Counted from the stretch's first letter, positions 6,697 to 64,000 are shown. The stretch: 64,000 bases of DNA from Zootoca vivipara (GCF_963506605.1 NC_083294.1:37944001-38008000); one strand, 5' to 3'. Numbers and translations: made by a program. Notes: generated by a model not told the origin, from the letters alone.

Positions 6697-9600
6697 TTAC
6701 TTAATGTTCTCCAAACCCTGGAAAATAAAAAGTGAAGCAAATGAGTTAAATGTGTCCGCTGTGCACAACGCTGCTGCTATCAAATTACACTATATAATCA
6801 GGTTTAACAAACCTCTTTTCAAGGTGGTGTCTTCCTTAATCCTACCAACAGAAAAATACTAATTGCGCAAACACAAAGTAAGTTGCTCAACTTTTAATAC
6901 TAACAAGCGCAGGCAGGTTTGCTGTTTCCTTTGTTACATCAGGCTGCCACTGACAGAATTGCTCTGCCATCACAGAGTCTGGAAAGAAGACTCCTTAGGG
7001 CAGGAGTGGGGAACTTTTGGCCCTTGAGATGTTGCTGAACTGCAACTCCCATCAGTCCTAGAAAATACAACAAATGGTCAGGCATGATGGGAGTTGTAGT
7101 TTGGAAAGTTCATAAGTCTTTAAAGATGCCATGGGGAATCTACACAAGTAATGACAGCTGTTCTCCAACTTATGGAAGATGATCAGGAATGCACAAGAAG
7201 GGGCAGGGCATGCACGGCCATCCCTGTTTCTTTCTTCACATCATTAACATCATGTGGAGAAACACATGTCTGAAAAAGGCTCTGCTATGAGCAGAACATG
7301 CCATGCGCATTATAATATTGAACACAGAAGGATAAAAATAACATTGTGCAGAGGAACATTTAGGGGCCAAAACAAATGTAAACTGTTGTGGCATTTAGCT
7401 CCCCATCCCCACAAAAAAATAGTGTTGTGACTTTGCAACTAGACAGCAGCATGCAAGGAAGTTTGTTCAAACCAACCTTGGAGTCATAGTACTGATTTAC
7501 TCCAGACACACGCTTGTCTCTCTGCATCAGGTACCACTGATAGGTGTTCCGAGCAATTCTCTTCTCCTGGGCACATAAGAAATAAGGTGGACAATGTGTA
7601 GACAAGAGGCAGTGGGAGACAGATAAAGTGAGAAGAATTAAAGCAAAGTTGACAAAAAATGTGAAATATTGAAAAATTCAACAGATGCGTGCAGACCTAT
7701 TCCTTTTTTGAGATGAAAAGCAGACTGCTCAGTCCTGCTTCACAGCCTAGTAACGAGGCTCAGATATACACATGACAGACTATCCTTGTCATTCTTAGCT
7801 GAAGGTATGATTATTTGGATGTCATGGGCAATTCAGGGGACAACACTGTGGGGTTCAATAGATGTGGTTTAAGAAAGCCTAATCTGAACACCACTTCTGC
7901 AAACTGCAGGTGTGAGTGAGGCTCATTTCACTTAATATGCCCACCCCAAAAAGAATATATTCATAAACAAAGAAAATCAACTAGAGTTTCAGCTTTAACA
8001 TATTTGTTAATGGTTTATTTGTTAATTTAATTTTTATTAATTTTACTAAAATTTCATTTTCTTACAATTTTTTCTTACTATTATTACTATTATTATTTTA
8101 ATTTGGTGTTTGTCTGCAGACAGTTTTTCAGGTCATGTGGCCAGCATGACTTAAGCCGCTTCTGGTGCAACAGAACACCGAAACCAGAGCAGCGCATAGA
8201 AACGCCATTTACCTTCCCGCCAGAGTGGTACCTATTTATCTATTTGCACTTTTTGGCGTTCTTTCGAACTAGGTTGCCAGGAACTGGGACTGAGCAACAG
8301 GAGCTCACCCCACTGCGTGGATTCGAACCACCAACCTTCTGATTGGCAAGCCCAAGAGGCTCAGTGGTTTAGACTACAGCGCCACCCACATCCCATTTGT
8401 TATTGTTAACTACTTTTAAAATATTTATTTTCCTCTCCTGTAATACTCTACTAGCCGCCCTAGAATAAACCTACAATGAAAGTGTAGGGCAGTGGTTTCA
8501 ACCAATGTGCCGCAGCACCACAGGGTGAGTTGAATGGTGGTCAAGACTGCTGTGGGCAACAATGGCTTCTGTCCCTCTTTCCTTCCCTTCCTCCTCTGAT
8601 GCCCTCTCACGTATCTGCCTCCCAAAGGCTTGTGCGGCTGTTTGTTGCAGCAGCCCTTGCTACAAGCACCACAGGTGAATGGTGCCTCTGGGGCTGGCCA
8701 GGGGAGAGGAGAGGAGGCTGAGGGAACACTCTACAAGAGAGGTTGTTTGAGAAAGGGTGAGACGCTGTCAGCTCTGCAGGCAAGAACCGTAGAAAGAATG
8801 TACTTGGTCAAGGGAGCCATGGACTCAAAAAGGTTGAAAACCTCTGGTGTAGGATATAAATTACACAAATAAATAAAACATGTCCAGGCCTCATGTACTG
8901 TGCCTTTGTCACATTCAGACTGGGCAACCAGATGCCTATGGGAACCTAAGTAAAACACCACTATCCCAACATGTGAACCGCAGCAACTGATATTCAGAGA
9001 CATACTGCCTCTGATACAGGAGGTAGTACATACCAGTGGCTAATAGTCCTTGAAAGCATTAGCCTCAGTGAATTTGACCAACCACTTCTTAAAGCTATCC
9101 AAGCTGGTGGCCATCACTGCATCTCCCGGGAGTGAATTCCATAGTTGAAGAGTGTTTTCTTTTGTTTGCTTTGAATCTTCCAGCATTCTGCTTCATTGGA
9201 TGGCCCTGGGTTTTAATATTATGAAATGGGGGCGGGGGACGATGACACAACTCTCCCTATCCTTATGGGCTTTAAAGCCTTAAAAAGGTTTTTGTCACAG
9301 TTATTCGAAGGGCTGTCAGTTCCCACACCCAGCTGCCCATTCTCTGAGATGAGCCACCAGGTGAAGGTGAATTGCCAGGCAAAAGGCAGTCTAAGAAATG
9401 AGTCAAACATGCTGGAGCAGGCCAATGAGCCATCAAATCCAGTGTCCTTTTGCTCACAGTGGCTGCCCAGATGCATATGGGAAACCTATAAACACAAACA
9501 CAACAGCACTCTCCCTGTCATTTCCAGAAACTTATATTTGGAAGCATTGCTGCCTCTGACTGTGGAGGCACCAGAGCATAGCTATCATGGCAAGTACCGT

Positions 9601-10329
9601 AGCTTTGTCCTCCATAAATTTGTCCAATCCTCTCTTAAAGCCATCTCCATGGTAGCCCCACATCTTTGGAGTTCATTACCAACAGAATCAACATTGCAGC
9701 CCTTTCAGAAAGGTCTGAAAACAATTCTTCTTGCTAGGTTTCTCCTGAAATGTATTGCTTTCATTATTATGATTTTGCTGTTGCCTTTGATTACATTTTA
9801 GAAATTCTGGGTCACTTGCTTGTTTTCTTAGGTCTCTGAGGCCTCCTGGCGTTAATACGCAAGTACTGCACGTTGGATTTTGGGTTGCATATTAGACGAT
9901 TTCTTCAGAGAGTTTCAAAGGCGGCGTGCAATTCACTTAAAATTATTATTTACACCCAAAAGGTTCTCAGGGCAGCTTAAAGACCAGCCCCCCCAATCCC
10001 ACCAGTTTTAAGAGACCCTCTGAAAAGTCATGGCAGGCAAGGGAAAAGAACGGAGGGGGGGAGCAAACTCAAGCTCTAAAAGCCGCTGTTCCTAAATCGA
10101 TTACACACTGTACATTTAACACAAACAAGTTCTTAAAGATACAACAATTCCTAAATCAGCAATATGGGATTTCAGAAAAGGAGAGGGGAGATGGGGATTC
10201 GTGAGGAGGCGCTGACATGCCACGCACCTTGTGCCCGTTGGTGTATTTGTGGATGTAGGCGGTGGCCACGCCAGGGATGACCAAGCACACGTACATGACG
10301 CCCAAGCTAGGCAAGATCTCGTACCACAT
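6697..10329 (-). CDS. NDUFA1: NADH:ubiquinone oxidoreductase subunit A1 (MWFE), 70 aa
   Basis: Exons 10329-10228 ([34 protein letters not shown]), 7566-7477 ([30 protein letters not shown]), 6717-6697 (GLENIK*). GT-AG introns; AATAAA on the minus strand at 6666-6671; closely matches recalled mammalian MWFE. Confidence 0.97.
8103..8392 (-). mobile_element. Sauria SINE
   Basis: Same family as 16410-16766, 17452-17766, 35880-36235 and 42395-42735; tRNA-like head GGTGGCGCTGTAGTCTAAACC...GGTTCGAATCC. Confidence 0.85.
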
Positions 10330-11572
10330 CCCGACGGCTGCGCGGCTCTTTCCCTCCGCGACCCTGGCGACCTCTCAATCAGCAGAGCTGCCACACGGCT
10401 TCCCTCAAAGCAGAGCTGGTGCTCCTGCGCATGCTCCGCCAACAGCCCTTCTATCGCGAGATTCAGGCAGCGTGGCCCAGAATGCTACCTTCCCTTCCTC
10501 CCCCAACTCCGCCCCAAACGCGCCAGCTGCGCATGCGCTATCCGCCCCGCTAGCATGGTCACGACAGGGTTACGGGGTGATGTTGCTATGGCGACAAGCC
10601 CCGCGGAACGCTCTGAGGCGATTTGTTTGGTTTCTGTTTAAAGGCTCAGTGGATATCGCTCTCCGCTCTTACAGTAAATATCTTACACTATATCTTACAG
10701 TATAGATACACCTGTACCTATATATAAAAACCACGATATATACTCGAACTGTTAGGTGCCTGGCAGGCCGCAGTGCATGCCGGGAATTGAACTTCTTAAA
10801 GATGCGTGGAACTTTTTAGTGGGTGGGCGCAGCATGCTGGGAGATGTAGTCTCGAAGCATCCAGCGAATTAAAACGCCCCACTAAAATTAGGCAACCTCT
10901 CCGCTGGGCAGTGCATGCTGGGAGACGTATTCTCGAAGCATTCAGCGAATTGAAATGCCCCACTAAAATTAAGCCACCTCTCCGCGGGGGCTGAGCATGC
11001 TGGGAGATGTAGTCCCGAAGCATCCCGCGAATTGAAGGGCCTCACTGAGATGAGGCAACGTCTCCTCAGGGCGGTGCATGCCGGGAGACGTATTCTCGAA
11101 GCATCCAGCCAATTGAAGCGCCCTACTAAAATTAGGCAACCTCTCAGGGGGCGATGCATGCTGGGAGACGTAGTCCCAAAGTCTCCGACGAATTGAAACG
11201 CCCCACTAAGAGGATGAAACCTGTCCGCGGTGCATGCTGGGAGATGTAGTCGCGAAGCCTCCAGCGAATTGAAGCGCCCCACTGAGATAGGCAACCTCGG
11301 AGCATGCTGGGAGGTGTAGTTGCGGGAAAGCGCCTCTCCACTGGGTCTGAGCGCCAGGACCTCCTCTCGCCGGCCGCGGGGGCGCTGTGGCGCAGCTGTT
11401 TACTATGCTGCTACTGCCGGCGGCGGCGTCCCGCTCTCCCCCTCCCGTTCCTGCGAGAGCAGCGGCGGCCAATGGGCGCGCGGATCTGGCGAGGCGCGGG
11501 CGGAGGGAGACATCGGCAGCGCGGGCGGGGGCGTTGGCGGGCGAAGGCCTGATGCGGCTCTCCGCGTTCGCG
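10330..11572. promoter_or_regulatory. Bidirectional CpG-island promoter shared by NDUFA1 and UPF3B
   Basis: Divergent ATGs at 10329 (-) and 11573 (+). CpG-rich; NRF1-like TGCGCATGC at 10426 and TGCGCATGCGC at 10528-10538; RFX X-box-like GTTGCTATGGCGAC at 10582-10595; CCAAT and GC boxes near 11470-11530. Confidence 0.9.
10775..11325. repeat. Tandem ~70-82 bp repeat, each unit starting with a ZNF143/Staf-type site (GCATGCTGGGAGATGTAGT)
   Basis: GCATGC(T/C)GGGA begins at 10775, 10832, 10913, 10995, 11076, 11156, 11232 and 11302; the six middle units also share ...CGAAGC..CC..CGAATTGAA.CGCCCCACT.. Confidence 0.9.
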
Positions 11573-14500
11573 ATGAAGGAAGACAAGGAGAACGCGCGGC
11601 CGAAGGAGAAGCGAGGGGTTCCCGTCACCCCGACCGGTGGGGTGGGAGCGGCGGCGGCGGACGCCAAGGCGGGAGGAGAACCGGACAGGCTGGATCGGCC
11701 GAAGGACAAGAAAGAGATCCTGAGCAAGGTGCGCAGAGAAGCTCCCCGCTCGGGGCCCGTCGGGGTCGGGGTCCCGCGGCAGGTGGGGCGCATTTCCTTT
11801 GCGCTGGGCTGGACTCGGCGGGGCCGAAAGCGCCTTGCTGCGCATCGTCGCCCCGTGGCGTCAGCCTCCCTCTTGCTCGTGGACTTCAAACGCAAAAAAT
11901 ATTCCCGTGCGGTTTCCCCCAGCCGTGCATGGAGAACTAGGCTCTTCGCTTCTCCTGACGCGGTGGCTTTTTTCTCCTTAATCCGCAGGTTGGGGGGGGG
12001 GGGAGAGAAGGTGCGGGAACACTTTTAAGTCGCAAGGTTTCAAAAAAAAAAGAGGGTGCGCGTGCGTGCGTTATTCCCCTACCATCGCACAAACTTTGCT
12101 GACTGCCACCACCATCACCTGCAGCCTGAAATGGCTGTGTGAGTATCTGTCTGTACCCCGAGAGACGATGGAGCGCCTGGGGTGATGTCAAAGTGCTGCA
12201 TTTAGCAGCACCCAAGTAACCTCCCTGGGTCACAGCAAGCCTGGGCATTGTGCACCTAGGCTTCACCGCTGACTCGCTGGTCCAAAGGAAAGCAGAGCAA
12301 GACGTTTGCTACCAGCTTGGCTGCAGAAGTTGTGGGAAGGAGGCATACAACCCCACTCCAGATTTGTGTAGGGCTTTAGCCTTTTCTTCTTCTGAAGTTC
12401 TCCCACAAGGCAGAGAGCAGGTTTAGGATCGGAGTTTTTCTGCTCCTATGGTAGATGGGCTCCCTTCCCAGGTTGATGAGCCCCATCTGCCCCTCGCTTC
12501 CTTCTACAGCATGTTCAGAAACTGCCTTCTTGAATATTGGATCCACTATTGGTCTCGTCCACCAAATCTGCTGGAGCCTGTCTTCGTCCCAAACTCACCA
12601 AGGGTTTGCCCTCACCTGGTTTAGCTGGCCTATACCAGACGTGGTCCAGAACAGGGGTTTTCTTTTCAGTTCTGCTCATTGTATTAACTGGCCTTAAATT
12701 GCATCATTTTTTAATCTCTGTTTTGATCAACCTCTCTTATTAGGGAACACTCACATTCTGGTCACCAAAGAGCATTAATACTTGCCATGCATTACTATTC
12801 AGTAAATAATTGGTGTGCAAAAATGTTTTTCAGTTGTAATGAACATGATGCAACAGACTGGTTGAAAGATTACGTAGGAAGCTGCCTTGTACTGATTAAC
12901 GTTATTGGCCTATCGAGTTCAGTCTTCTCTGTGCTGACTGGCAAGTGGCTCCACCAGTATGTCAGATAAGATTATTTTCCATATCTACCTGGGGATGCCA
13001 GGGATTAAACATGGAATCTTTTGTGTACAAAGCATGTAGTCTAGTGAATGTGTGTGTGCGCGCGTGTGTTGGTGTATATACGAGTGTGGATCAAAAAAAC
13101 TATAGCCATGGAAAAACATCAGACTCTTGTAGGACAGTTCAGCATTTTTTCTTTACTTTACTTGAAGGAATTTATTACACAGAGATTTACATGCCAGAAG
13201 AGCATGGGCTGCAGAGAAGCTGGTTTATTATGAAATCTCTGGTAGAAATGTGACCATATCTAAGGTGTTTTCCTTTGTTTTGAAATACCTTGGTTGTCAA
13301 ACTTAATCCGGTCCAGGAATCCGTTCAACTCCTGGAACACTTCGAAAACCAAGGTGTTGCTTCCAATTGGCTGCAGGAACTTCCTGCACTCAATCAGAAG
13401 CTGCGCCGGACATTTGGCTTCCAAAGAACATTCGCAAACCGGAACACTCACTTCCAGGTTTGCAGTATTCAAGAGCTGATTTGTTCGACAACTAAGTCGA
13501 TTGTATAATACACCTAGTTTTTGTAAACAGATGCAAATTTTTCTTTAAGGTAGTGATTCGACGCCTGCCTCCCAGCTTGACCAAGGAACAGCTTGAAGAA
13601 CATCTCCAACCTTTGCCTGAACATGACTATTTTGAATTCTTTGCTAATGACTCCAGGTAAAAGGAACTATAAGCATTTGGCTGTGCTTCATGTAACAATG
13701 TCATGTCATAAATGTCTTTCTGTTTTACACCCGTCTGTGTTGTGTATATTTACAATCATCACTCAGCGACGTTTCCTTATACATTGCCATTTTCTGTCCT
13801 TCTGCAGTTTGTACCCTCACATGTTTTCCAGAGCATACATCAACTTTAAAAACCAAGAAGACATTGTTCTGTTCAGGGATCGCTTTGATGGTTATGTTTT
13901 TGTTGATCACAAAGGCAAGTAAGCCTAAAACTTGGTTCTGTATATCATATCTGCTTTAAAACATGTTGGCATACATTTATACAGTGATTAAACTGTAATT
14001 CTGGTAAACCCATGCATTTATTACTTGACTCAAGATTTCAAAGGACAGCTTATAGACCAATTCAGTGCATTATAATGTGGTAGTGGGTACCTTTGATTTT
14101 AGTGCAGTTCATCTCAAAATAAGCTTTCTTGAACAGCCCATTCCTAAGCACACTTTCTTAAAAGTAAATTTCACAAGCAGCAGTTGAACATGCTTCTGAA
14201 TAAGTACACTTAGGATTGTAGTGTGCATCAATAATAGGGACCCTGTGGTGTTCCAGATGTTGTTAAACAACAACTCCCAGACCCATGATAATTGGCCATC
14301 TCTGCTTCAGTTTGTGGGAGTCCAACAACATCTGGGGAGGTTCATAGTACCCTATCCCTTGTCTAAATCCTATCTTCCGCTGTACTGAGGCTCTACCTTA
14401 ATCTGCTAATTAGGGATAGCTGCTGCTTTGCACTGCATAAGCAGATGGTTTTGGGTGTGGCGAAGAAGCACAGCTAGTGCCACATTTGTGTAGTGGATCT

Positions 14501-20500: not shown

Positions 20501-23500
20501 TACTATAGAATTGTAGAGTTGGAAGGGACACCAAGGGTTAACTAGGCCAACCCGTTGCAATGCAAGAATCTCAACACATGGTTCCCCATTTAATTTGAAA
20601 CCATACTAGACCCTGCTTAGCTTTGCAAATGTGCTAGCAGTTTTATTGCCATCTAATAAATTCGAGGGAAGAACATTAAACCTTGCCAGAGAGAATACTT
20701 CCTAGGTTTAAGGATTGTTTACCAACCCAAGTATGGCATTCCATCTTTATAAAGGTTCATGGGGAACAGAGTACCTTTGCAGCTCCTTGAAGTTCTTGGA
20801 GATTTATATCTGAAATCGTCTGTTAAAATTTTTATTTGACATCCTTAGATCCATGGTTAATAGGTTGGAGAGTGATAGGTTATGTTGTCGGGTAAAGGTA
20901 ATGATTGTTATTACAGTGCTCAAATAAAATCTTAATTATATTTGTGATCTTATAACTTCTTAATCCATATGCAGAAATGTTCCTAGTGCTATATGCCAGT
21001 AGCCAATTGGATAGCTCAGTTGGTTAGAGCATGGTGGTGATAATGCCAAGGTTGCAGGTTCAATCCTTGTACGGGACAGCTGCATTTCCCTGCATTGCAG
21101 GGGGTTGGACTAGATGATCCTCAGGGTATCTTCCAGCTCGATGATTCTATGATTTACCACCCATTCACTCAGTTTGGAGCTTTTGGAGCAGTTTATGATG
21201 CAACAGCTCTCCTGTCCCAACATAAAGACTTGGCTTTGGTCTCACTACATCTTTCCCCCCCTCTTACAGCGGCTTAGAGAAGAAAAACGAGAGGAGAGGA
21301 GGCGGAGAGAACTAGAGAGGAAAAGACAACGAGAAGAAGAAAGAAGAAAATGGAAAGAGGAAGAAAGAAGGAAAAGGAAAGAAGCCGAAAAAACAAAGAA
21401 AGTGGAGCGATGCCCAGAAAAAGAAAGGGACAAATTAAAGGATGAACCAAAGATTAAGGTATCCCTTCATTCCTGTAGGATGCATTGGCCCTATGGTGTT
21501 TTTGTATGCACACTCGTGAAATACAAGAGCAATTTTGCATTTGGCTTTGTATAAAGTGTGCTCTCTTTTTGCATGCACACAGTTATTTGAGGTTGCAATC
21601 CTATGCATGCTTGGGACTAAGTTATACTGACTTAAAGTATTATAGAATAGTACTCAGTTCTGCACAGCATGTGTTTTGAAGGCACTGTATAAACAAACAG
21701 TGGTGACAAGTTCTTATTTATTGCACTAGAAGCTAGCCGTAGCAATCTCTTGAGAATAAAAAGCAGAACGTAGAATAAGGCCTTTATCCTATACTATTAA
21801 GCCTGAGAGTAAACACCACTGGACTCAGTGGGATGTGTGCTCAGAAGTATTGGATTGCATTGGGGGGGGGGTGGAATTAAAAAGCAAAGTTCTGGTAAGT
21901 GATAAGAAACAGTGAATCACGGAAATAGCTAGTTACATAATGCTAATATATTTACTCTTGTATTATGCACCAGGCAGCCCCCTTGCCTTTCAGTGCAGAC
22001 TAGCATCCTAGCACAGTTAGCGGCAGAATTAACTTAGTAAGGAAAACTAAATTTGTTCTCTTCCTAGCTACTTAAGAAGCCAGAAAAAGATGAAAGAGAG
22101 TTTGAAAAAAAAGAAAAGGCCAAGAAACCGGAGAAAGAGAGTCTGAGGGAGGAAAAGGCAGCAAGTGCGACCAGCAGTATGCCAGCCAGGCGCTCCGATG
22201 GGGAGGCTAAGGAGGAGAAGTACAAAAAGTTAGTGCTTTCATTTCAGTACATATCCTTATTTCTCAGAATATGATTATTAATTAGGCTGCCTCGTACCAG
22301 ATCTGCTTTTAAATTATATTGTTTACTAGTGTTCCAGATTAGAACTGTGGCGGGACCACTTTTTGGTCTTTCCAGTCTTTCTCGCAGTTCCAAATGGCTG
22401 AAGAGCAGATGGTCAGTTATGCAGCTCAGTTAGGGGCCCTTCACATATTAGAATTTAATTATTTTTAAGTATGCTTCTCAAAGTGTAAACTGTGAAAGGC
22501 GAAGTGTTACAAATGCCAGAGAACTAGGATTGACTGCTGTTGAATTTAAGTTCAGCTGCAAAGCTGGGTTTGTTGCCGCATGAAGCGTGAGAAACAGCCT
22601 TGAGAATTCCTGGTTTCTGAGACCTTTTAGTAAATAGCCTTGTGTTGCCTTTGGCTGTGGCTTTCAATAAATGTACATTAGTTGATACTTGGTTAGAACA
22701 CTTTCTAAATCTTGTAGAAAGTTGCATGGCAGTATAGTGGTGATAGGCCTTCATTTTACTGTGTTCTCGCTGGATTGAATCTCCCAAGTCCCTTTTCATG
22801 CAGATTGGAAGATGACTGTGGAAAAGACTATAGAGAAAGAGAGAGAGAATATGACCGAGACAGAGAATATGAGAGAATGCAAAGAGAAAGAGACAAACTC
22901 CGACGTCAAGAAGAAGAGAGAAGGAGGCAGAAAGAGCGCTTTGAGAAAGAGAAGGTTTTTAGAAGAAAGGAGGAAGATGTGAAAAGGGAAAGAGACTCAT
23001 TGCGAGAGAAAGGGAAGAGAGCTGAATTGGCAGAGTACGTGGGCAATGCGGAGAAATCCGAGAAAGTAACCAAAGAGGACAAAAAAGAAGATATGGCTAA
23101 GAGGGATCGCATTAGAAATAAGGTACTGATTGATTCTGTAATGAAATCATTGTTCCTTGTTAGGCTGTGGGTGTATGAAGCTTTTTATTATAGACACAGA
23201 ATGTTTAAAAAATATGACTCCATCTAAGGACATTACAAAATAAAGTTTATTTGTAGTACAACTTATTTCCAACTGGGAATTGCATAGGATTGCAATTACA
23301 GGCTTGTAGGAATGATTGACTTGCTTATCTAGTAAGTGACATTTATCTTCTGCTCTTTTTTTTTTTGCAAGATGTTCAGGAGTAGCACTTGTGGAGCAAT
23401 CCCATATATTGCCCTTAACCAAAAGCCCTGGTCACCTGGTGAACTTCAAGGCGGGGGGTGGGTGGGTGGTGGGGTTGGACCTATATCTCTGTTCTGGGTC

Positions 23501-28659: not shown

Positions 28660-31600
28660 ATGGTAAGTTAATCCGTTGCCATCCTCCGCTGGGGCTGCTT
28701 TGCTAGCCATCCCCATGGCACCCCGCGTAGAATTAGTGTTTGATGCCCATCCTCGTCTAAACCCCGGACGTCTAGTAGCTATTTTGGGGTGGTGGTGGGG
28801 AGAGAGTTCCCTGATTCCCTGGTTCGTTCATTGCAAGGAGGTGGGGGGAGCTCAGTACAAAATAGGTGGGAGGGAAAGGACGTCAAGCCCAATATCCCAT
28901 AATATTTTTTTCTTCACAACAACCCTGAACGGTAGGTTGCACTCCGAGAGATTGAAGGATATATTAATAATAATAATAATAATATATTCGTTATTTATAC
29001 CCCGCCCATCTGGCTGGGTTTCCCCAGCTTCTCTGGGCGGCTTACAACAGAATATTAAAATACAATCCTTGGGGCTGTAGTTGCCTGAGCCTTGCTTGAG
29101 ACCTGTGTCCCCCCCCTCCCGGAGAGCTTTAATTCTCAATGTGGTTTAAACAACTCTCAGCAACCTTAACAAACACCAGCTCCTGGGATTCTTTTCTGGG
29201 ACCCCTTCATTCGGCATAGCAGAGCTGTAAATATGTACTGCAGAAAGGGAGTACCTCCCTGGTCCAACAGTGGAGCCTAATAGGGAACCTATGACCCTTC
29301 AGATGTTGATGATCGGCATCTTCTACCACCTCTGAGCATTGCCGTTGAGCCCCCAATAGCAAAAGGTGAGATATAATAATTGAAACTCCTTATCTTTTCT
29401 TTCCAACCTGCCAGTCTTCCCACAAGACGTTCAAGATCAAGCGGTTTCTTGCTAAGAAGCAGAAGCAGAACCGGCCCATCCCGCAATGGATCCGCATGAA
29501 AACTGGCAATAAAATCAGGTATGGGGATTGCCTTCTAGAGTACAGCAGAACCTCTGCTTATGTTACCCTCAGTTAATGTAAACTTCAGGTTGCGAAAGCG
29601 GCAAACTTTCACCGCATGCACAGAAGCGCTCTACGCGCCATGCACATGCACAAAAGCACTTTTGTGCACAGTGTTTTGTTCAAATAGCTGTGGTTTTTGT
29701 TGGTGCTGTGTGGCAAACATACTTCAGAGGTGGCCAGACCTCTGGAATAGCATGCTGTAGTTTCAAATACTCTCCCCAGTTTCAGCCCCCTTTGCCCGTG
29801 ATAGCTCCAGTGGCATGGAAATGGGTCCTCTGCTGGAGTATTTAGCTCCCTTGGACGACTAGTGGATGGGAAATACTCCTGGTGGTTTATCATTAATCTG
29901 CTTGGGAATACTGCATCATGCTTGCACTTGCTGATGTAAGTGTACTCAATGTGAATCCTGTCCCCTACAAACTTATGCTAACTGATTCTTTGCCATGGGC
30001 ATGATCTTTCTGAAGGTGCTGAGCCATAAGTTTCTTTCTTTACTGATTGAACAGTAAATGCCACAGTGAACTCTCTTTAGTGCTTTCCTGTAACTGGCGA
30101 CAGGACTTTCTGTTGGTTGGTTGAACTTCCAGCTTATGTCTGTTGTTCATTTTCTAACCTTCACATGAACCTTTTACTGCAGTGGTCCTGCCACAAATAC
30201 ATGGAGAACCTGACGTCCCGGGGGGGGGGGGCAGAAGGGGCCATCCAAGATATTGTGCAACCTTCCCAGAGCCTGGTAAGCAAGGCAGAGGGAAAGGCCT
30301 GCTGCAGACAGACGTGGGGGTTGGGGTTCTGGGGGTTTCCTGACTGCATGATTTTGCCTTTGTACATGGACTCCCAGAACCAACCCCTTGTGTAACTTGC
30401 AGGCCTGCTATATTGAAGGTCTCTACTGACATACCCTAGAACAGGCATCCCCAAACTGCGGCCCTCCAGATGTTTTGGCCTACAACTCCCATGATCCCTA
30501 GCTAACAGGACCAGTGGTCAGGGATGATGGGAATTGTAGTCCAAAACATCTGGAGGGCCGAAGTTTGGGGATGCCTGCCCTAGAACCTCAGCGTTAAAGG
30601 GTCCATTCTTACTCAGTTTTTCCCAGATCTTGTATGTGTGTTTTCCTGCTACAACACTTTCTCTTCCTACTGTTTCTTTTTACACCTCCTTTGAGCATGA
30701 TGGGTTTTCCATACCTACCTACTAGTTATAATTTGGATGTGGTGTTGGAATCATTGAGCTTTGTCTCCAATATCAGCTGTTCAGAGGTGAGTTTTCCAGA
30801 TAAAGTGTGTTCCCAAAGCAGGCTGCAATTACAGTGCTTCATTCTGTGGGAGCACTGCCATGTCCCTGCTGAGAGCAATTCTGTTACTTAGGAATCGATC
30901 TCACCTGTTCTGGTGAAATCAGACTCCCTTTTTAGCAGTGACAGGTGTGCAAGGAAACCTCCAGACACTTCCAGTGAAAATGACCGATGGGAGCTTTTCT
31001 AGGGGAAATGCCTCTATAGTTGTGAATAAAGGGCTGTGTTTTTATTAGGCCAGATTCTGTAAGTGAAAGATAATCCAGAGGTCCCATCTTTCCAGCCCTC
31101 TCAGAAGGAATGAAAATCAGAATTTATGTTGTGCAATGATAAGGAATGCTTTCCCCACAAAAACAAGCCATGAAGACTTTCAGTGGCTAGAACTACTGAT
31201 TGATAACTCCATCAGTACCACTCTGTCCACCGTGCACAGGTTGGTGCCACTGCTGCATGGACAAATGGAGTCAGTGATGCATAATGTGTGCATATTTTTT
31301 GCCATACCTTTTCCCAAAGCCTGCTACACTTGTGTGTGTCATCCTCCAAACACACCCATAGTTTCTTTGTGGTCTGCCAGACCCCAAAATCTGATGTTTT
31401 AGACTCATTTTTATTTATTGCTGGGGGGAAAGAGCTGCCCCCACAATGTATCCCAAGATTAAGTTTGTTGTTGTTTAGTCGTTTAGTCGTGTCCGACTCT
31501 TCGTGACCCCATGGACCAGAGCACGCCAGGCACTCCTGTCTTGCACTGCCTCCCGCAGTTTGGTCAAACTCATGTTCGTAGCTTCGAGAACACTGTCCAA

Positions 31601-54350: not shown

Positions 54351-56364
54351 GCGGGTGGGAAGACAGGAGGACAAGAGGATTTTACTGGCTAAAGGTGATG
54401 AGGTTTTTTTGGGGGGGGGGGTTGAGGGAGAGCCTTTGTATTAAACAAAAGAGGGTTTGCTTGATTGTGTGTGATCTGACTGGCCGTGATGGGCCGGATT
54501 TATTGGGTAGCGTGTTGCATAGGATGAAGGAGGAAGCAGTGCTTTGCAGATGACTGTCTTAAAGGCTTGGCCTGATGAAACTGGGGAGATTTGGGTTGGA
54601 TGATGTGGTGGGTGTGACCTCTTCTTCTATTAGCGTGGGATAGTTGGGGGCAGATTTTAACTAGGTTTGGGTTGCTCAGTTGTGGAGCCTTCTTCATTTC
54701 TGGAATACACTAAACTGGAGCTGTGGTGTGTGCATTTTGCAGATGAGGGGTTATTTATATTTATGATATATTTTTTTTGCAGGCTGTGGGGTTGCAACTG
54801 CCAGGGGCCACAGCAGGCACCTCCATAAATAAAGTGCTTTGGGTTTGATTGTAAATTGTTTCATCTTCAAGCAGCTTAATTTTCATTGTGCTCATTTTCC
54901 ATAAAGTGTTCGTTTCTCTCTTTGGCTCCATTTAGATTCCTATATATTGGCTTTTTTCTTTTGGGTACATTGGTCACATCACAATGCCTGGCATCTCCCA
55001 AAATGACAAAGAATTTTTATTTTATTTTTTAATTGGAAGGGTGGGAGATTTTTCTCTCGGCACCAGCTCTATAATATCCAGAGCTTACCTGCCCTTTTGT
55101 CTCTGCTGCGATGAAAGGGACCACAGAGGCACTCCTGAGGCAGGAGATGGAGCCCTTTGCAAACCAAATCAATTGAACATCTTTTGGCTTGTAGATGGGT
55201 TTAATTTGTTTGCAATTCCCTGTTCATTTTAACTAGGGAAAGGACCACAGGAGCTCCTGGGATTTCTAACATGCCAGGATGTTACAAGAAGGAGCATGCG
55301 GTGTAGTACAGCAATTGGGGATGGGGATCCTCTGTCCCTCCAGATACTGGACTACATCTCCCATCATCCCTCACCATTGGCCACCTTGGCTGGGGATTAT
55401 TGGAGTTGTAGTCCAACAATAGCTAGACGGCTAGATGTTCCACACCCCATTTTAAATGGATCATCTTTGTGTGTTAAAAGAATGTGTTGTACTGTATGAT
55501 GTTCTAGGGCTGGAATGAATCCAGTTTCTCCAGTTTCAAATATTTAATGAGAAGGGACCATAACTCAGTTAGCTAACATTTGTCTTGTATGCGGAAGGTC
55601 CCAGATTCAATCTCTGGCATCTCTAGTTAAAACAAATAATGGGGAGTAAGTGAATGGAAAGATCCCTAGTTGAGTTTCTAGAGGACTGCTGCCAGTCAGA
55701 GCAAGCAGTTTGGGGCTAGATGGACAACTAGCTTGTATTAGACAACTACATACTGTATAGCCATACAGTTCATGAATCTGACCTTCAGAGTGCAATATTT
55801 CAGTTTGTTCAGTTGGGTGGTATCCACAATTCGTTCCAAGTGCATATCACAGAGCATCATATATTTGGCTTGGCATGGTGAGAGTTGGGTCCAGATCCAT
55901 GCTCGGATCCATGAAGCTCACTGTGAGGCCTTTGCAGGTCGCTTGTAATCTATTCCCCCTCAAAAGAGCTCCAAAGACAAAATGTGATGACCTCATTTAT
56001 GCTGCCCTAATAAACATCTTGACTGAGGTTTGGAATGCCAGTGTGATAAAAAGTTAAAAATAAATATGCTACACTATGCTTTGCCAATTGCCAACCTGGT
56101 GGCTCCCAGTTGTTTTGGGCTACAGCTGGCAGTCAGTGCCAGCCAACCTGGTGAACATCACAGGAAGCTGCTGGATCAGGTCAATGGCCCATCTGTCTAG
56201 TCCAGTATCCTGTCTTCATAGTGGGCAACCAGATTCTTTATCAACAACAACAGCAGCAACAACAACAACAACATTTCTGCCCTATCATTCTTCTCAAAGA
56301 GCTCAAAGTAGTGACATGGGTGGTTCTCCTGCCCCTCTGTTTTACCTTCTCAATAACCCTGTGA

Positions 56365-59724: not shown

Positions 59725-60523
59725 ACTAGCTGGCCCGGCCATGCGTTGCTGTGCCTCAGTCTGTTAAATGAACCCTCAAAGTCTCCCTTCAGACTCCCCT
59801 CACCTTCAGAGGCCCCCTTCATTTTGTTTGAGATATTTTGTCCCTTCCCCCCCCACCCCCCGGTTCATCCCTATGAGTGCGCCCATCCTGTCCCAATCCA
59901 TGAGGCAGCGCATCCCCTCCTCTCCCCATTCCCCGGCACATCCCTGTGAGCAGCCCCACCCCCTCCTTGCACTCCCCCCCTCCGCCCACCCCTCGGCTCA
60001 TCCCTGTGAGTTCCCTGGTGTTGGTGTCAGCATATCCTGGCCTATATATCAGGTATTCGGCATTGGGGGGGGAAGGGAATGGTGGGGCGTGGTCCGCTTT
60101 TCGGCGCGGTGTTTGCGGTGTCAATGTGGCGTGGTCTGTCTGTGACAGTTGGACATGGGGGGCTAGGGGCAGGATCCCGGCGCCGGCCTTTGTGAAGTAA
60201 TGGCCTTTGTGGTGGTTATAGCATTTCGGTTGGTGATATCACGATCTTGGCTTGGCCATGGAGATGGAGCTTCTGGCTTCTATTTCCCAGCATGCACTTT
60301 TGTCTGAGTTGTGAGTTCTGGAAAACGGGTTGTTGTTTTTTGGTTTTTTTTTAGTTTTACGTGGCCCAGGTGTGACATCTGTGTACGCGAACTGTATATG
60401 GTCACTCGCATATTCGCTTGGGACGTTGTGTCAAAATTTGAACGCAATCGGTCAAGCGGTTTTGGAGAGAAGTGGAGACACACCCACATGGCCAGTTTAC
60501 ATTTTTATATACAGTATATAGAT
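59725..60523 (+). mobile_element. Non-autonomous Helentron/DINE-like (HINE) rolling-circle element
   Basis: Starts ACTAGCTGGCCCGGCCATGCGTTGCT; has the subterminal AAATTTGAACGCAATCGGTCAAGCGGTTTTGGAG block; ends TTTTTATATACAGTATATAGAT; internal short repeats; no TSD seen. Confidence 0.6.
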
Positions 60524-63010: not shown

Positions 63011-63074
63011 AACATAAACTAGTCAAGGTAAGAATTGAGGCACACATTATTATTGCCACTGAAATGCCATACAT

Positions 63075-63209
63075 CAGGCATGGCCAAACTTGGCCCTCCA
63101 GCTGTTTTGGGACTACAACTCCCATCATCCTTAACTAACAGGACCAGTGGTCAGGGATGATGGGAATTGTAGTCCCAAAACAGCTGGAGGGCCAAGTTTA
63201 CCATGCCTG
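63075..63209. mobile_element. Palindromic hAT MITE (same family as 30442-30577)
   Basis: CAGGCATGGCCAAACT...AGTTTACCATGCCTG ends with a near-identical core. Confidence 0.88.
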
Positions 63210-64000
63210 GCCTAGGCTAATGGAGGGGAACTTAGCTGCTCTCTGCATGATATTGTTGGACTATGAATCACATCATTCCTGACCATCTGCCATTGTGGCT
63301 GCGGGTGATTGGAGTTGGAGTCCAACAACATCTGGAAGGCCTCAGGTACCCCCCATTCCTTCCTCTTCTTTTCAGTTTTGGGGGAGATGACTTCTGCTTG
63401 ACCTTAACGCATTATTTACTGAGCTGTGCAGAAATACTAGTTTAACTGCAGTGCATTAATTTCTTAACACATTTCCTATTTGTGACATTATAAGGTAATT
63501 TTCTTGCAGTACAAAGTAGGGGGGAAAGGTTGATATTGCTACCTTTTGCAGAATTATGGCCCTTATCCTGCAACAAACCTGATGGATCTTTCCCAAAAAA
63601 ACCACACACACACCTGGGATGTGTGAGTGCATAAAGGAAATAGTTCCCTCTACAATCAAAAGTTTAATTTCAGATTATGGGAAATTGGGGACCTGGCCCT
63701 TTAATACACAATTTAAAAAGCATTAGGCTTTTTTATGTGGTCTGGACCCTACAGAGTTTGCACGGTGGGGGAAACAATTTAGGAAGCTGTCTTAAGCCAA
63801 ATCAAACCATTGGAGAAGAACCATCACTCAGTAGAAGCCATTTGCATTGTGTGCATTTGGTCCCATGTTCAGACCCTGGCATCTTCAGGTGGGGCTGGAA
63901 GAGAACATTGTCTGAAACCCCAGAGAGCTATGTGGACCAGTGATCAACCTCAGCATAAGGCTGCTTCCTTTGTTCCTATTGGTCTATCTAGCTCAGTAAA

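What the first reader, a model, noticed from the sequence alone, without database searches (positions are those of the whole stretch)
10775..11325. Eight-fold tandem array of ZNF143/Staf (SBS) motifs inside the NDUFA1-UPF3B bidirectional promoter
Seen: eight same-orientation copies of GCATGC(T/C)GGGA at spacings of 57, 81, 82, 81, 80, 76 and 70 bp. Four read ACTAC(A/G)TCTCCCAGCATGC on the reverse strand. This motif is the best-conserved part of each diverged unit. Known: ACTACAnnTCCCAGCATGC is the extended SBS associated with ZNF143 and THAP11/HCF-1, and it is enriched at bidirectional promoters. Inference: a promoter module amplified by tandem duplication into a homotypic cluster, with two units close to one nucleosome length. 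Copy number could co-tune a complex I subunit and an NMD factor.
Basis: partly seen in the sequence, partly recalled or inferred. Interest (0 to 1): 0.8.

Follow-up and report, generated by a model that had tools for sequence, protein, structure and literature searches.

The report
Tandem ZNF143-site array in lizard promoter
Between the head-to-head NDUFA1 and UPF3B genes of the common lizard, an 81-bp promoter segment carrying a ZNF143/THAP11-type binding motif has been duplicated into six full and two partial copies; the motif is the best-preserved part, so it is a real and probably functional cluster of one regulator's sites, though of a known kind.

Summary
GCATGCYGGGA occurs eight times on the + strand (10775-11312) at the stated spacings; the window has 9 hits against 0.06 expected.

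- **Structure:** six full 70-82-bp units (10822-11298), a seventh copy cut off just after the motif, and a lone site 57 bp upstream.
- **Motif:** on the minus strand each full unit reads as a 25-bp SBS2-type ZNF143/THAP11 site. Five copies fit ACTAYRNNNCCCR, two carry AATAC, one lacks that part.
- **Conservation:** the motif is the best-kept block, 16/19 invariant columns against 24/63 (p=5e-4; 0.004 without CpG and gap columns).
- **Setting:** one continuous CpG island (array o/e 0.83) between NDUFA1 (RNA 5' end about 10400-10420, minus) and UPF3B (ATG 11573, plus). The species is the common lizard and the locus is probably Z-linked.
- **Not a dispersed repeat:** no copy elsewhere in the window and no extra contigs in three DNA data sets. 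Likeness to the genome's abundant ACTACAACTCCCA MITE stops at the motif.
- **No copy-number variation:** three other data sets carry the same array.

Untested: protein binding, the UPF3B start site and any co-tuning. Earlier scan notes on other DNA of this genome describe the MITE, not this array.

Verdict: a probably selected homotypic site cluster, a new member of a known kind.

The parts
10227..10420 (-). NDUFA1 exon 1. The CDS is 10228-10329 with the ATG at 10329; the RNA 5' end lies at about 10399-10421.
   Evidence: Pfam MWFE E=9.7e-13. 34/34 aa identical to Zootoca vivipara NDUFA1. RNA reads cover 10227 to about 10420, with a splice junction at 10227 and molecule ends at 10399.
10529..10538 (.). 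GCGCATGCGC palindrome (NRF1-type by my own knowledge) in the GC-rich NDUFA1 proximal promoter.
   Evidence: Read directly. It lies about 110-130 bp upstream of the NDUFA1 RNA 5' end.
10620..10764 (.). AT-rich spacer (GC 0.37) between the NDUFA1 promoter and the array. It holds a small 12-14-bp tandem repeat at 10667-10707.
10769..10793 (-). u1: a solitary SBS1-like site (TTCCCGGCATGCACTGCG on the minus strand) without ACTACA, 57 bp before the array.
   Evidence: It matches only the motif part of the unit profile (E=0.19).
10822..11298 (+). Six full tandem units, u2-u7, of 81, 82, 81, 80, 76 and 70 bp. Pairwise identity is 65-85%.
   Evidence: TRF, the repeat finder D1, alignment, nhmmer E=1e-22 to 1e-25 for each unit.
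10826..10850 (-). u2 SBS2-type 25-mer, ACTACATCTCCCAGCATGC...
10907..10931 (-). u3 SBS2-like 25-mer with AATACG in place of ACTACA.
10989..11013 (-). u4 SBS2-type 25-mer.
11070..11094 (-). u5 SBS2-like 25-mer with AATACG and CCCG.
11150..11174 (-). u6 SBS2-type 25-mer (ACTACG).
11226..11250 (-). u7 SBS2-type 25-mer, ending in ...GCACCGCG.
11296..11320 (-). u8: terminal truncated copy, SBS2-type motif only (ACTACACCTCCCAGCATGC), at the edge of the GC-rich UPF3B promoter.
   Evidence: A 47-nt stretch, 11291-11337, also matches one other low-copy locus with 6 differences.
11573..11728 (+). UPF3B exon 1 coding part (52 codons, MKEDKENARPKEKRG...), with a GT donor at 11729.
   Evidence: ORF, sequence. 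The next exon, about 13547-13657, hits Pfam Smg4_UPF3 at 2.3e-10. SNORA69 lies downstream, as in human Xq24 synteny (my own knowledge).
10200..12100 (.). One continuous CpG island spanning both first exons and the array.
   Evidence: CpG o/e is 0.77-1.22 throughout, against 0.28-0.35 in flanking bulk. For u2-u7, o/e is 0.83 and GC 0.56.

Best explanation
A promoter-embedded minisatellite. An approximately 81-bp segment of the UPF3B-proximal CpG-island promoter contained one composite SBS2 site, meaning a ZNF143/Staf site overlapped by the THAP11-HCFC1 'ACTACANNTCCCA' site. This segment was copied head to tail by slippage or unequal exchange. At least one step probably copied a two-unit block (u2u3 to u4u5). 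The result is six full units, a truncated seventh and a neighbouring solitary site, all in one orientation. The units have since diverged by 15-35%, but the binding motif has been kept. The most likely reading is that several copies are still bound and act together as a homotypic upstream activating cluster. That cluster would hold the shared CpG island open and feed initiation mainly at UPF3B (last motif 250 bp or less from its ATG), and perhaps at NDUFA1 (5' end 350-900 bp away). Shown here: the anatomy, the motif match, motif-biased conservation, CpG-island continuity, local uniqueness and fixed copy number in the samples seen. Inferred: protein binding, activation, and any effect on either gene.
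For: The minus-strand units align to the published SBS2 probe ACTACAATTCCCATTATGCACCGCG, to the TBS ACTACANNTCCCA (PMC3627581) and to M4 ACTAYRNNNCCCR (PMC5006282 abstract), all with identical spacing. TCCC(A/G)GCATGC is present in 8/8 copies, G16 in 8/8 and C17 in 7/8. Positions 13-15 vary, as expected for an SBS. The motif is the most conserved block (p=5e-4; p=0.004 without CpG and gap columns). CpG o/e is 0.83 across units that have diverged by 15-35%, which points to long-term germline hypomethylation typical of bound promoters. The full unit is found only here: nhmmer finds none elsewhere in 64 kb, and depth is flat at single-contig level over 10548-11276 in three DNA data sets at 85% likeness or more. 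[quoted passage not shown] ZNF143-dependent genes have their TSS within 500 bases of a site, mostly with the site upstream (bioRxiv 2024.05.13.594008).
Against: There are no binding, accessibility or reporter data. The RNA run gave no reads on UPF3B exon 1 or the array, so the UPF3B start site and the array's position relative to it are unknown. The conservation test rests on six units, and the motif was noticed because it is conserved, so the test is partly circular. Two units carry AATAC, which should weaken THAP11-type recognition. Position 8 of the SBS is C, where the cited probes have T and the classical consensus has A (my own knowledge). THAP11 at SBS2 is mainly repressive, so the sign of the effect is open. 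NDUFA1 has its own proximal promoter, separated from the array by an AT-rich spacer. No copy-number variation was seen.
Confidence: 0.55

Rival explanations
1. A neutral promoter minisatellite. A segment that happened to hold the promoter's single functional SBS2 was duplicated by slippage. The extra copies are redundant or unbound, and the array persists only because it does no harm inside an unmethylated island.
For: Tandem duplication needs no selection. Units u6 and u7 are shortened and more diverged, and u3 and u5 carry a damaged ACTACA box. No copy-number variation or expression link was seen. The conservation statistic comes from only six units.
Against: The motif is kept in every copy while the rest of the unit has lost 15-35% identity. 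14/15 non-CpG motif columns are invariant against 17/34 elsewhere. The pattern of kept and free positions inside the motif follows the SBS (G16 and C17 kept, 13-15 free).
Confidence: 0.28
2. TE-derived. The founding unit was an arm or internal repeat of a transposable element that carries the ACTACAnnTCCCA motif, such as the abundant palindromic MITE of this genome. On this reading the array is a piece of repeat DNA and not a promoter module.
For: The window holds at least 18 ACTACAACTCCCA-like sites in MITE or TE copies, for example the paired arms at about 7039/7100, 30479/30540, 55351/55412 and 63112/63173. Local alignments of unit against MITE reach z of about 5. Earlier scan notes describe this MITE family. 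SBS2 sites carried by TEs are known from MLT1J.
Against: The likeness covers only about 25 nt around the motif. The 18 nt flanking it are not significantly alike (empirical p 0.03-0.2 per unit). TE arms read ...TCCCATCATCC and lack the GCATGC...GC ZNF143 half. No full unit occurs elsewhere in 64 kb. No extra contigs lie over the array in three DNA data sets.
Confidence: 0.1
3. A repressive or separating module. A row of SBS2 sites held mainly by THAP11-HCFC1, or bound ZNF143 acting as a roadblock, keeps the two divergent promoters functionally apart or dampens UPF3B.
For: THAP11 binds only SBS2 and is mainly repressive, and its binding is mutually exclusive with ZNF143. ZNF143 can repress by occlusion or roadblock when badly placed. 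The array doubles the distance between the two promoters.
Against: There is no direct evidence. The array sits upstream of both genes, which is the activating configuration. A looping or insulating role for ZNF143 has been disputed (PMC11687419).
Confidence: 0.07

Closest known systems
SBS2 composite sites (ZNF143/ZNF76 with THAP11-HCFC1; the M4 motif) in vertebrate CpG-island promoters
   Same: The motif architecture and spacing are the same: ACTACA, then 1-2 nt, then TCCCAG.ATGC...GC. The setting is also the same: a promoter in a CpG island next to a divergent gene pair (PMC3627581, PMC3082894, PMC5006282).
   Different: Described promoters carry one or a few sites. Here seven or eight same-orientation copies arise from one 81-bp tandem duplication. 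Binding has not been tested in a lizard.
Human BUB1B promoter (two SBS, each with an ACTACA box) and the multi-site ZNF143 gene promoter
   Same: Both are homotypic SBS clusters in which the sites add up. At BUB1B, mutating both SBS lowers bidirectional reporter activity about 14-fold. In the ZNF143 promoter, low-affinity sites are used for autoregulation (PMC3936768 abstract).
   Different: Those have two or three sites and are not units of a minisatellite. No regular 81-bp phasing is reported for them.
TE-borne SBS2 sites (MLT1J in mammals; the ACTACAACTCCCA MITE of this lizard genome)
   Same: The same motif class is multiplied by DNA copying instead of arising point by point.
   Different: Those copies are dispersed by transposition, lie mostly outside promoters, and (for the lizard MITE) lack the ZNF143 half of the site. 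The array here is local, tandem and unique.
Promoter minisatellites / VNTRs that carry transcription-factor sites
   Same: Units of tens of bp repeat head to tail next to a start site, each with a factor site. Human VNTRs of this sort are associated with expression differences (PMC8096271 abstract).
   Different: VNTRs are defined by copy-number polymorphism, and none was seen here in three further data sets. The units are old and diverged, not homogenised.

Membership tests
SBS2 / THAP11-ZNF143 composite site | An 18-bp SBS core with CCCR at positions 3-6, ATGC at 9-12 and GC(G) at 16-18 | tested here: met
   TCCC(A/G)GCATGC is present in 8/8 copies, G16 in 8/8, C17 in 7/8 and G18 in 3/8. The comparison is with the probes TTCCCATTATGCACCGCG and with the CCCR positions given.
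SBS2 / THAP11-ZNF143 composite site | ACTACAN immediately 5' of the SBS (TBS ACTACANNTCCCA; M4 ACTAYRNNNCCCR) | tested here: met
   The exact TBS is present in u2, u4, u7 and u8. M4 is also met by u6 (ACTACG). u3 and u5 have AATACG, one mismatch, and u1 lacks the box. So 5 of 8 copies meet it and 2 more nearly do.
SBS2 / THAP11-ZNF143 composite site | Occupancy by ZNF143/ZNF76, THAP11 or HCFC1 | not testable with these tools
   No ChIP, CUT&RUN or EMSA data for this species could be reached.
Bidirectional promoter | Two genes head to head on opposite strands | tested here: met
   NDUFA1 exon 1 is on the minus strand with its ATG at 10329. The UPF3-family gene is on the plus strand with its ATG at 11573.
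Bidirectional promoter | Start sites less than 1 kb apart (definition in the PMC3082894 abstract) | tested here: inconclusive
   The NDUFA1 5' end is at about 10399-10421 by RNA reads. No reads fell on UPF3B exon 1. The upper bound to the ATG is about 1150-1175 bp.
Minisatellite / VNTR | Head-to-tail units of about 10-100 bp | tested here: met
   Period 81, 5.9 copies.
Minisatellite / VNTR | Copy number varies among individuals | tested here: not met
   Contigs of X5 (10306-12300, 2 differences, 0 gaps), X6 (10297-11370, 0 differences) and X9, labelled organism B (10569-11686, 0 differences), all span the array unchanged. Contigs can hide rare alleles.
Dispersed repeat / satellite / TE | Many copies of the unit elsewhere in the genome | tested here: not met
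   No full unit lies outside the array in 64 kb. Contig depth is flat at single-contig level over 10548-11276 in three DNA runs at 85% likeness or more. No whole-genome search at lower identity was possible.

The most novel reading that the evidence does not exclude
The locus appears to lie on the lacertid Z chromosome, which shares gene content with the mammalian X. The amplification of an activator site in front of two dosage-sensitive housekeeping genes, an NMD factor and a complex I subunit, could then be a gene-by-gene answer to hemizygosity in ZW females. That would be a local, cis-encoded form of dosage compensation built by tandem duplication of a ZNF143 site after the W copy was lost.
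Probability: 0.05. Interest if true: 0.8.

Novelty: new member of a known kind. Interest (0 to 1): 0.4.

Why it matters
Homotypic clusters of sites for one factor are usually thought to build up slowly. Here one duplication process produced seven or eight SBS2 sites, and the later divergence shows which bases were protected, much like a natural mutagenesis of the motif. That makes it a handy system for two questions: whether ZNF143/THAP11 sites act additively, and whether they can serve two divergent genes. If the array turns out to be confined to lizards in which the locus is Z-linked, it would bear on how single genes adjust dosage on sex chromosomes. As it stands, it is a well-documented but functionally untested promoter minisatellite.

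Tried and rejected
1. MITE origin of the unit. Local alignments reach z of about 5 but cover only the motif and a few bases. Flank-only similarity to 18 TE arms is not significant. This is kept as a minor rival.
2. CpG decay as the cause of the apparent motif conservation. The result holds without CpG and gapped columns, and the array has CpG o/e 0.83.
3. A 163-bp higher-order repeat. Support is weak: TRF gives 81% against 77% matches, and there are three diagnostic sites for ABAB against one for AABB. Mean identity at distance 2 is barely above that at distance 1. This suggests one dimer duplication and nothing more.
4. A hidden snRNA-type or other RNA gene served by the SBS sites. Rfam finds nothing between the two genes.
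6. The UPF3B start site from RNA reads. The one RNA run gave no coverage on UPF3B exon 1.
7. Evidence that mammalian NDUFA1 or UPF3B are ZNF143 targets. The supplements held for PMC11687419 do not list them, and none are held for PMC3627581. No paper links UPF3B with ZNF143/THAP11 in a meaningful way.
8. A literature search for tandem SBS arrays found none described. The library is partial, so this is weak evidence of absence.
9. A 10-nt inverted match of the unit inside u1 is at chance level and was dropped.

Exons were searched one by one by reference.

Full report
**Observation.** The 11-mer GCATGCYGGGA starts at 10775, 10832, 10913, 10995, 11076, 11156, 11232 and 11302, always on the + strand, giving spacings of 57, 81, 82, 81, 80, 76 and 70. 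The whole 64-kb window has nine matches where shuffles give 0.06. The ninth is an isolated site at 60285 on the minus strand. Tandem Repeats Finder reports 10825-11298 with period 81, 5.9 copies and 77% matches, and the same stretch with period 163 and 81% matches. The repeat finder gives six 86-nt copies at 69-100% identity to the reference copy. Two read AATACGTCTCCC(A/G)GCATGC and one reads ACTACACCTCCCAGCATGC.

**Anatomy.** A profile HMM of the six full units finds exactly those six at E=1e-22 to 1e-25. The last copy (11298-11324) and the first (10768-10793) match only profile positions 4-33, which is the motif part. The object is therefore six full units (10822-11298; 81, 82, 81, 80, 76 and 70 bp), a seventh copy cut off right after the motif where the GC-rich UPF3B promoter begins, and a solitary site 57 bp upstream whose surroundings are not recognisably unit-like. 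Pairwise unit identity is 65-85%. Units u3 and u5 share three derived states, including the AATAC variant, against u2 and u4. Only one site supports the alternative grouping. This suggests that a two-unit block was copied once, but the 163-bp periodicity is otherwise weak.

**The motif.**
- On the minus strand the consensus unit begins ACTACGTCTCCCAGCATGCACCGCC.
- It has the same layout and spacing as the 25-bp SBS2 probe ACTACAATTCCCATTATGCACCGCG and the THAP11 site ACTACANNTCCCA of Ngondo-Mbongo et al. (PMC3627581). It also fits the promoter motif M4, ACTAYRNNNCCCR (PMC5006282 abstract).
- All eight copies keep TCCC(A/G)GCATGC. G16 of the SBS is kept in 8/8 and C17 in 7/8, while positions 13-15 vary. 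By my own knowledge of the SBS logo, those are the less constrained positions.
- Four copies have the exact THAP11 site, a fifth fits M4, two miss by one base, and one (u1) is SBS1-like without the ACTACA box.
- A chance match is excluded by my own rough estimate: the pattern carries about 29 bits, so about 3e-7 matches are expected per 81-bp unit on both strands.

**Conservation.** Among the six full units the 19 columns GCATGCYGGGAGAYGTAKT have 16 invariant columns against 24 of 63 elsewhere (Fisher p=5e-4). The block ranks second of 82 sliding windows. Two of its three variable columns are C/T changes at CpG-forming positions. After removing all CpG-forming and gapped columns the contrast remains, 14/15 against 17/34 (p=0.004). 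The test is partly circular, because the motif was noticed for being repeated. The non-circular point is that the best-kept block coincides with an externally defined factor site, down to which internal positions are free. A second, less conserved block (CGAAGCATCCAGCGAATTGAA) follows the motif. The AT-rich last third of the unit is the most decayed.

**Setting.**
- The minus-strand ORF 10156-10329 hits Pfam MWFE (9.7e-13). Its first 34 residues are identical to NDUFA1 of Zootoca vivipara, and a downstream exon matches 30/31. The window is therefore the common lizard or a very close relative, and an earlier scan note says the same.
- On the + strand an ATG at 11573 opens MKEDKENARPKEKRG..., with a GT donor at 11729. 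The next exon hits Pfam Smg4_UPF3 (2.3e-10).
- SNORA69 lies further downstream. By my own knowledge its human host RPL39 neighbours UPF3B on Xq24, which supports calling the gene UPF3B.
- Exons were searched one at a time by reference.
- The distance from ATG to ATG is 1244 bp.

**Reads.**
- Raw RNA reads of one run cover NDUFA1 exon 1 from the splice junction at 10227 to about 10420. Molecule ends cluster at 10399 and almost nothing lies beyond 10466. The NDUFA1 start is therefore about 350 bp from the nearest motif and about 900 bp from the farthest.
- No RNA read fell on the array or on UPF3B exon 1. Only about 6% of the run was read, so the UPF3B start site is unknown.
- The inter-TSS distance is at most about 1150 bp. 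'Bidirectional promoter' in the strict sense of less than 1 kb is not established.
- NDUFA1 has its own GC-rich proximal region with a GCGCATGCGC palindrome at 10529-10538. A 145-bp AT-rich spacer separates it from the array.
- Even so, CpG observed/expected stays at 0.77-1.22 from about 10200 to 12100, including 0.83 over u2-u7, against 0.28-0.35 in the flanks. The array lies inside a single CpG island and has kept its CpGs while diverging by 15-35%. This argues for long-standing germline hypomethylation.

- Within the window, unit segments outside the motif occur only in the array, even allowing three mismatches, and the profile finds no further full unit.
- In contigs of three DNA data sets, laid at 85% likeness or more, depth over 10548-11276 is flat and equal to the single spanning contig. 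The one exception is 11291-11337, the u8 motif and its flank, which another low-copy locus matches over 47 nt with six differences.
- The genome does hold an abundant palindromic MITE with paired ACTACAAYTCCCA motifs. This lead came from earlier scan notes and I confirmed it in this window.
- The MITE arms read ...TCCCATCATCC, so they lack the GCATGC...GC half of the site. Alignment with the unit covers only about 25 nt, and the 18 nt flanking the motif are not significantly alike (empirical p 0.03-0.2 per unit).
- A whole-genome search at low identity was not possible, so a remote TE origin of the founding unit stays a minor rival.

**Variation.** Contigs from three further data sets, two from other studies of the same species label and one labelled as a second organism, span the array with 0-2 substitutions and no gaps. 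No copy-number variation is seen, and the idea that copy number tunes expression has no support so far. The unit divergence suggests an old array. Using my own knowledge of squamate substitution rates, of the order of 1e-9 per site per year, I put its age very roughly at tens of millions of years. It should therefore exist in other lacertids.

**Mechanism.** The best-supported reading is a homotypic cluster of ZNF143/THAP11-HCFC1 sites made by tandem duplication and kept by selection on the motif. It would act as an upstream activating region of the shared island.
- Published work shows that one SBS suffices for bidirectional promoter activity and that mutating both SBS of BUB1B lowers it about 14-fold (PMC3082894).
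- ZNF143 and THAP11 bind SBS2 in a mutually exclusive way, with opposite effects (PMC3627581).
- On distance, UPF3B is the likelier main target. NDUFA1 lies within range of only the first one or two sites.
- The sign of the effect, activation or THAP11-type repression, is inferred and not shown.

**Rivals.** These are a neutral minisatellite whose extra copies are idle, a TE-derived repeat, and a repressive or separating module.

**Side observation on sex linkage.** In run X5 the unique contigs of this locus have depth 28.6-28.8, while contigs from elsewhere, including an NDUFA1 retrocopy, have 50-59. The lacertid Z chromosome is reported to combine chicken 4p and 17 content, which corresponds to human X and 9 (PMC6534595). 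The locus is therefore probably Z-linked. This prompts the speculative reading given under the novel case.

**Novelty.** Multi-SBS promoters, TE-spread SBS2 sites and promoter minisatellites carrying factor sites are all known. My limited literature searches found no described seven- or eight-copy tandem SBS2 array. I file it as a new member of a known kind, real and statistically solid in sequence, with its function untested.

Noticed in passing
window 10227-10415 (matching contigs from elsewhere in the genome): A processed NDUFA1 retrocopy exists elsewhere in the genome. Contigs in X5 and X6 match exon 1 with 14-22 differences and 2 gaps, and continue straight into the next exon at the 10227 splice junction. 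About 2% of the RNA reads carry its variants, so it seems to be transcribed.
   Followed up: partly
window 9900-12300: In DNA run X5 the unique contigs of this locus have depth 28.6-28.8, against 50-59 for contigs from other loci. SLC2A8/FBXW2, which lie on human chromosome 9, sit 28 Mb away on the same piece. The published lacertid Z content corresponds to human X and 9. Together these suggest the locus is Z-linked and hemizygous in that sample.
   Followed up: partly
window 30815-30946 (+): SNORA69 H/ACA snoRNA (68.4 bits, E=5.5e-10), presumably in an RPL39 intron. Synteny with human Xq24 is kept, except that no RNF113A-like gene lies between UPF3B and NDUFA1.
   Followed up: no
window 21012-21070 (+): A weak tRNA-model hit (31.3 bits, gathering score 29). 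It is probably a tRNA-derived SINE fragment and not a gene.
   Followed up: no
window ~7000-7130, 30440-30585, 55305-55450, 63070-63215: Copies of an abundant palindromic MITE whose two arms each carry ACTACAAYTCCCATCATCC, 49 bp apart. At least 18 such motif-like sites lie in the 64 kb outside the array. They have the THAP11-type half of the site but not the ZNF143 GCATGC...GC half.
   Followed up: partly
window 60285-60295 (-): An isolated SBS1-like site (TTTCCCAGCATGCAC, no ACTACA box) next to a GC-rich stretch at about 59900-60200. It may belong to another promoter.
   Followed up: no
window 12168-12300: Contig depth jumps to 240 in X5 and 28 in X6, with several short contigs and 43-52-bp skips. 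This points to a dispersed repeat in UPF3B intron 1.
   Followed up: no
window 11291-11337: The last motif copy and its 3' flank match one other low-copy locus over 47 nt with 6 differences (X5 contig of 782 nt, depth 52; two X6 contigs). This may be another SBS2 promoter or a small repeat family.
   Followed up: no
window 10875-10890, 10956-10971, 11119-11134: Three of the six units contain CTAAAATTA(G/A), which fits the MEF2-type pattern YTAWWWWTAR (my own knowledge). It is decayed in the other three units, so it is probably not under constraint.
   Followed up: no
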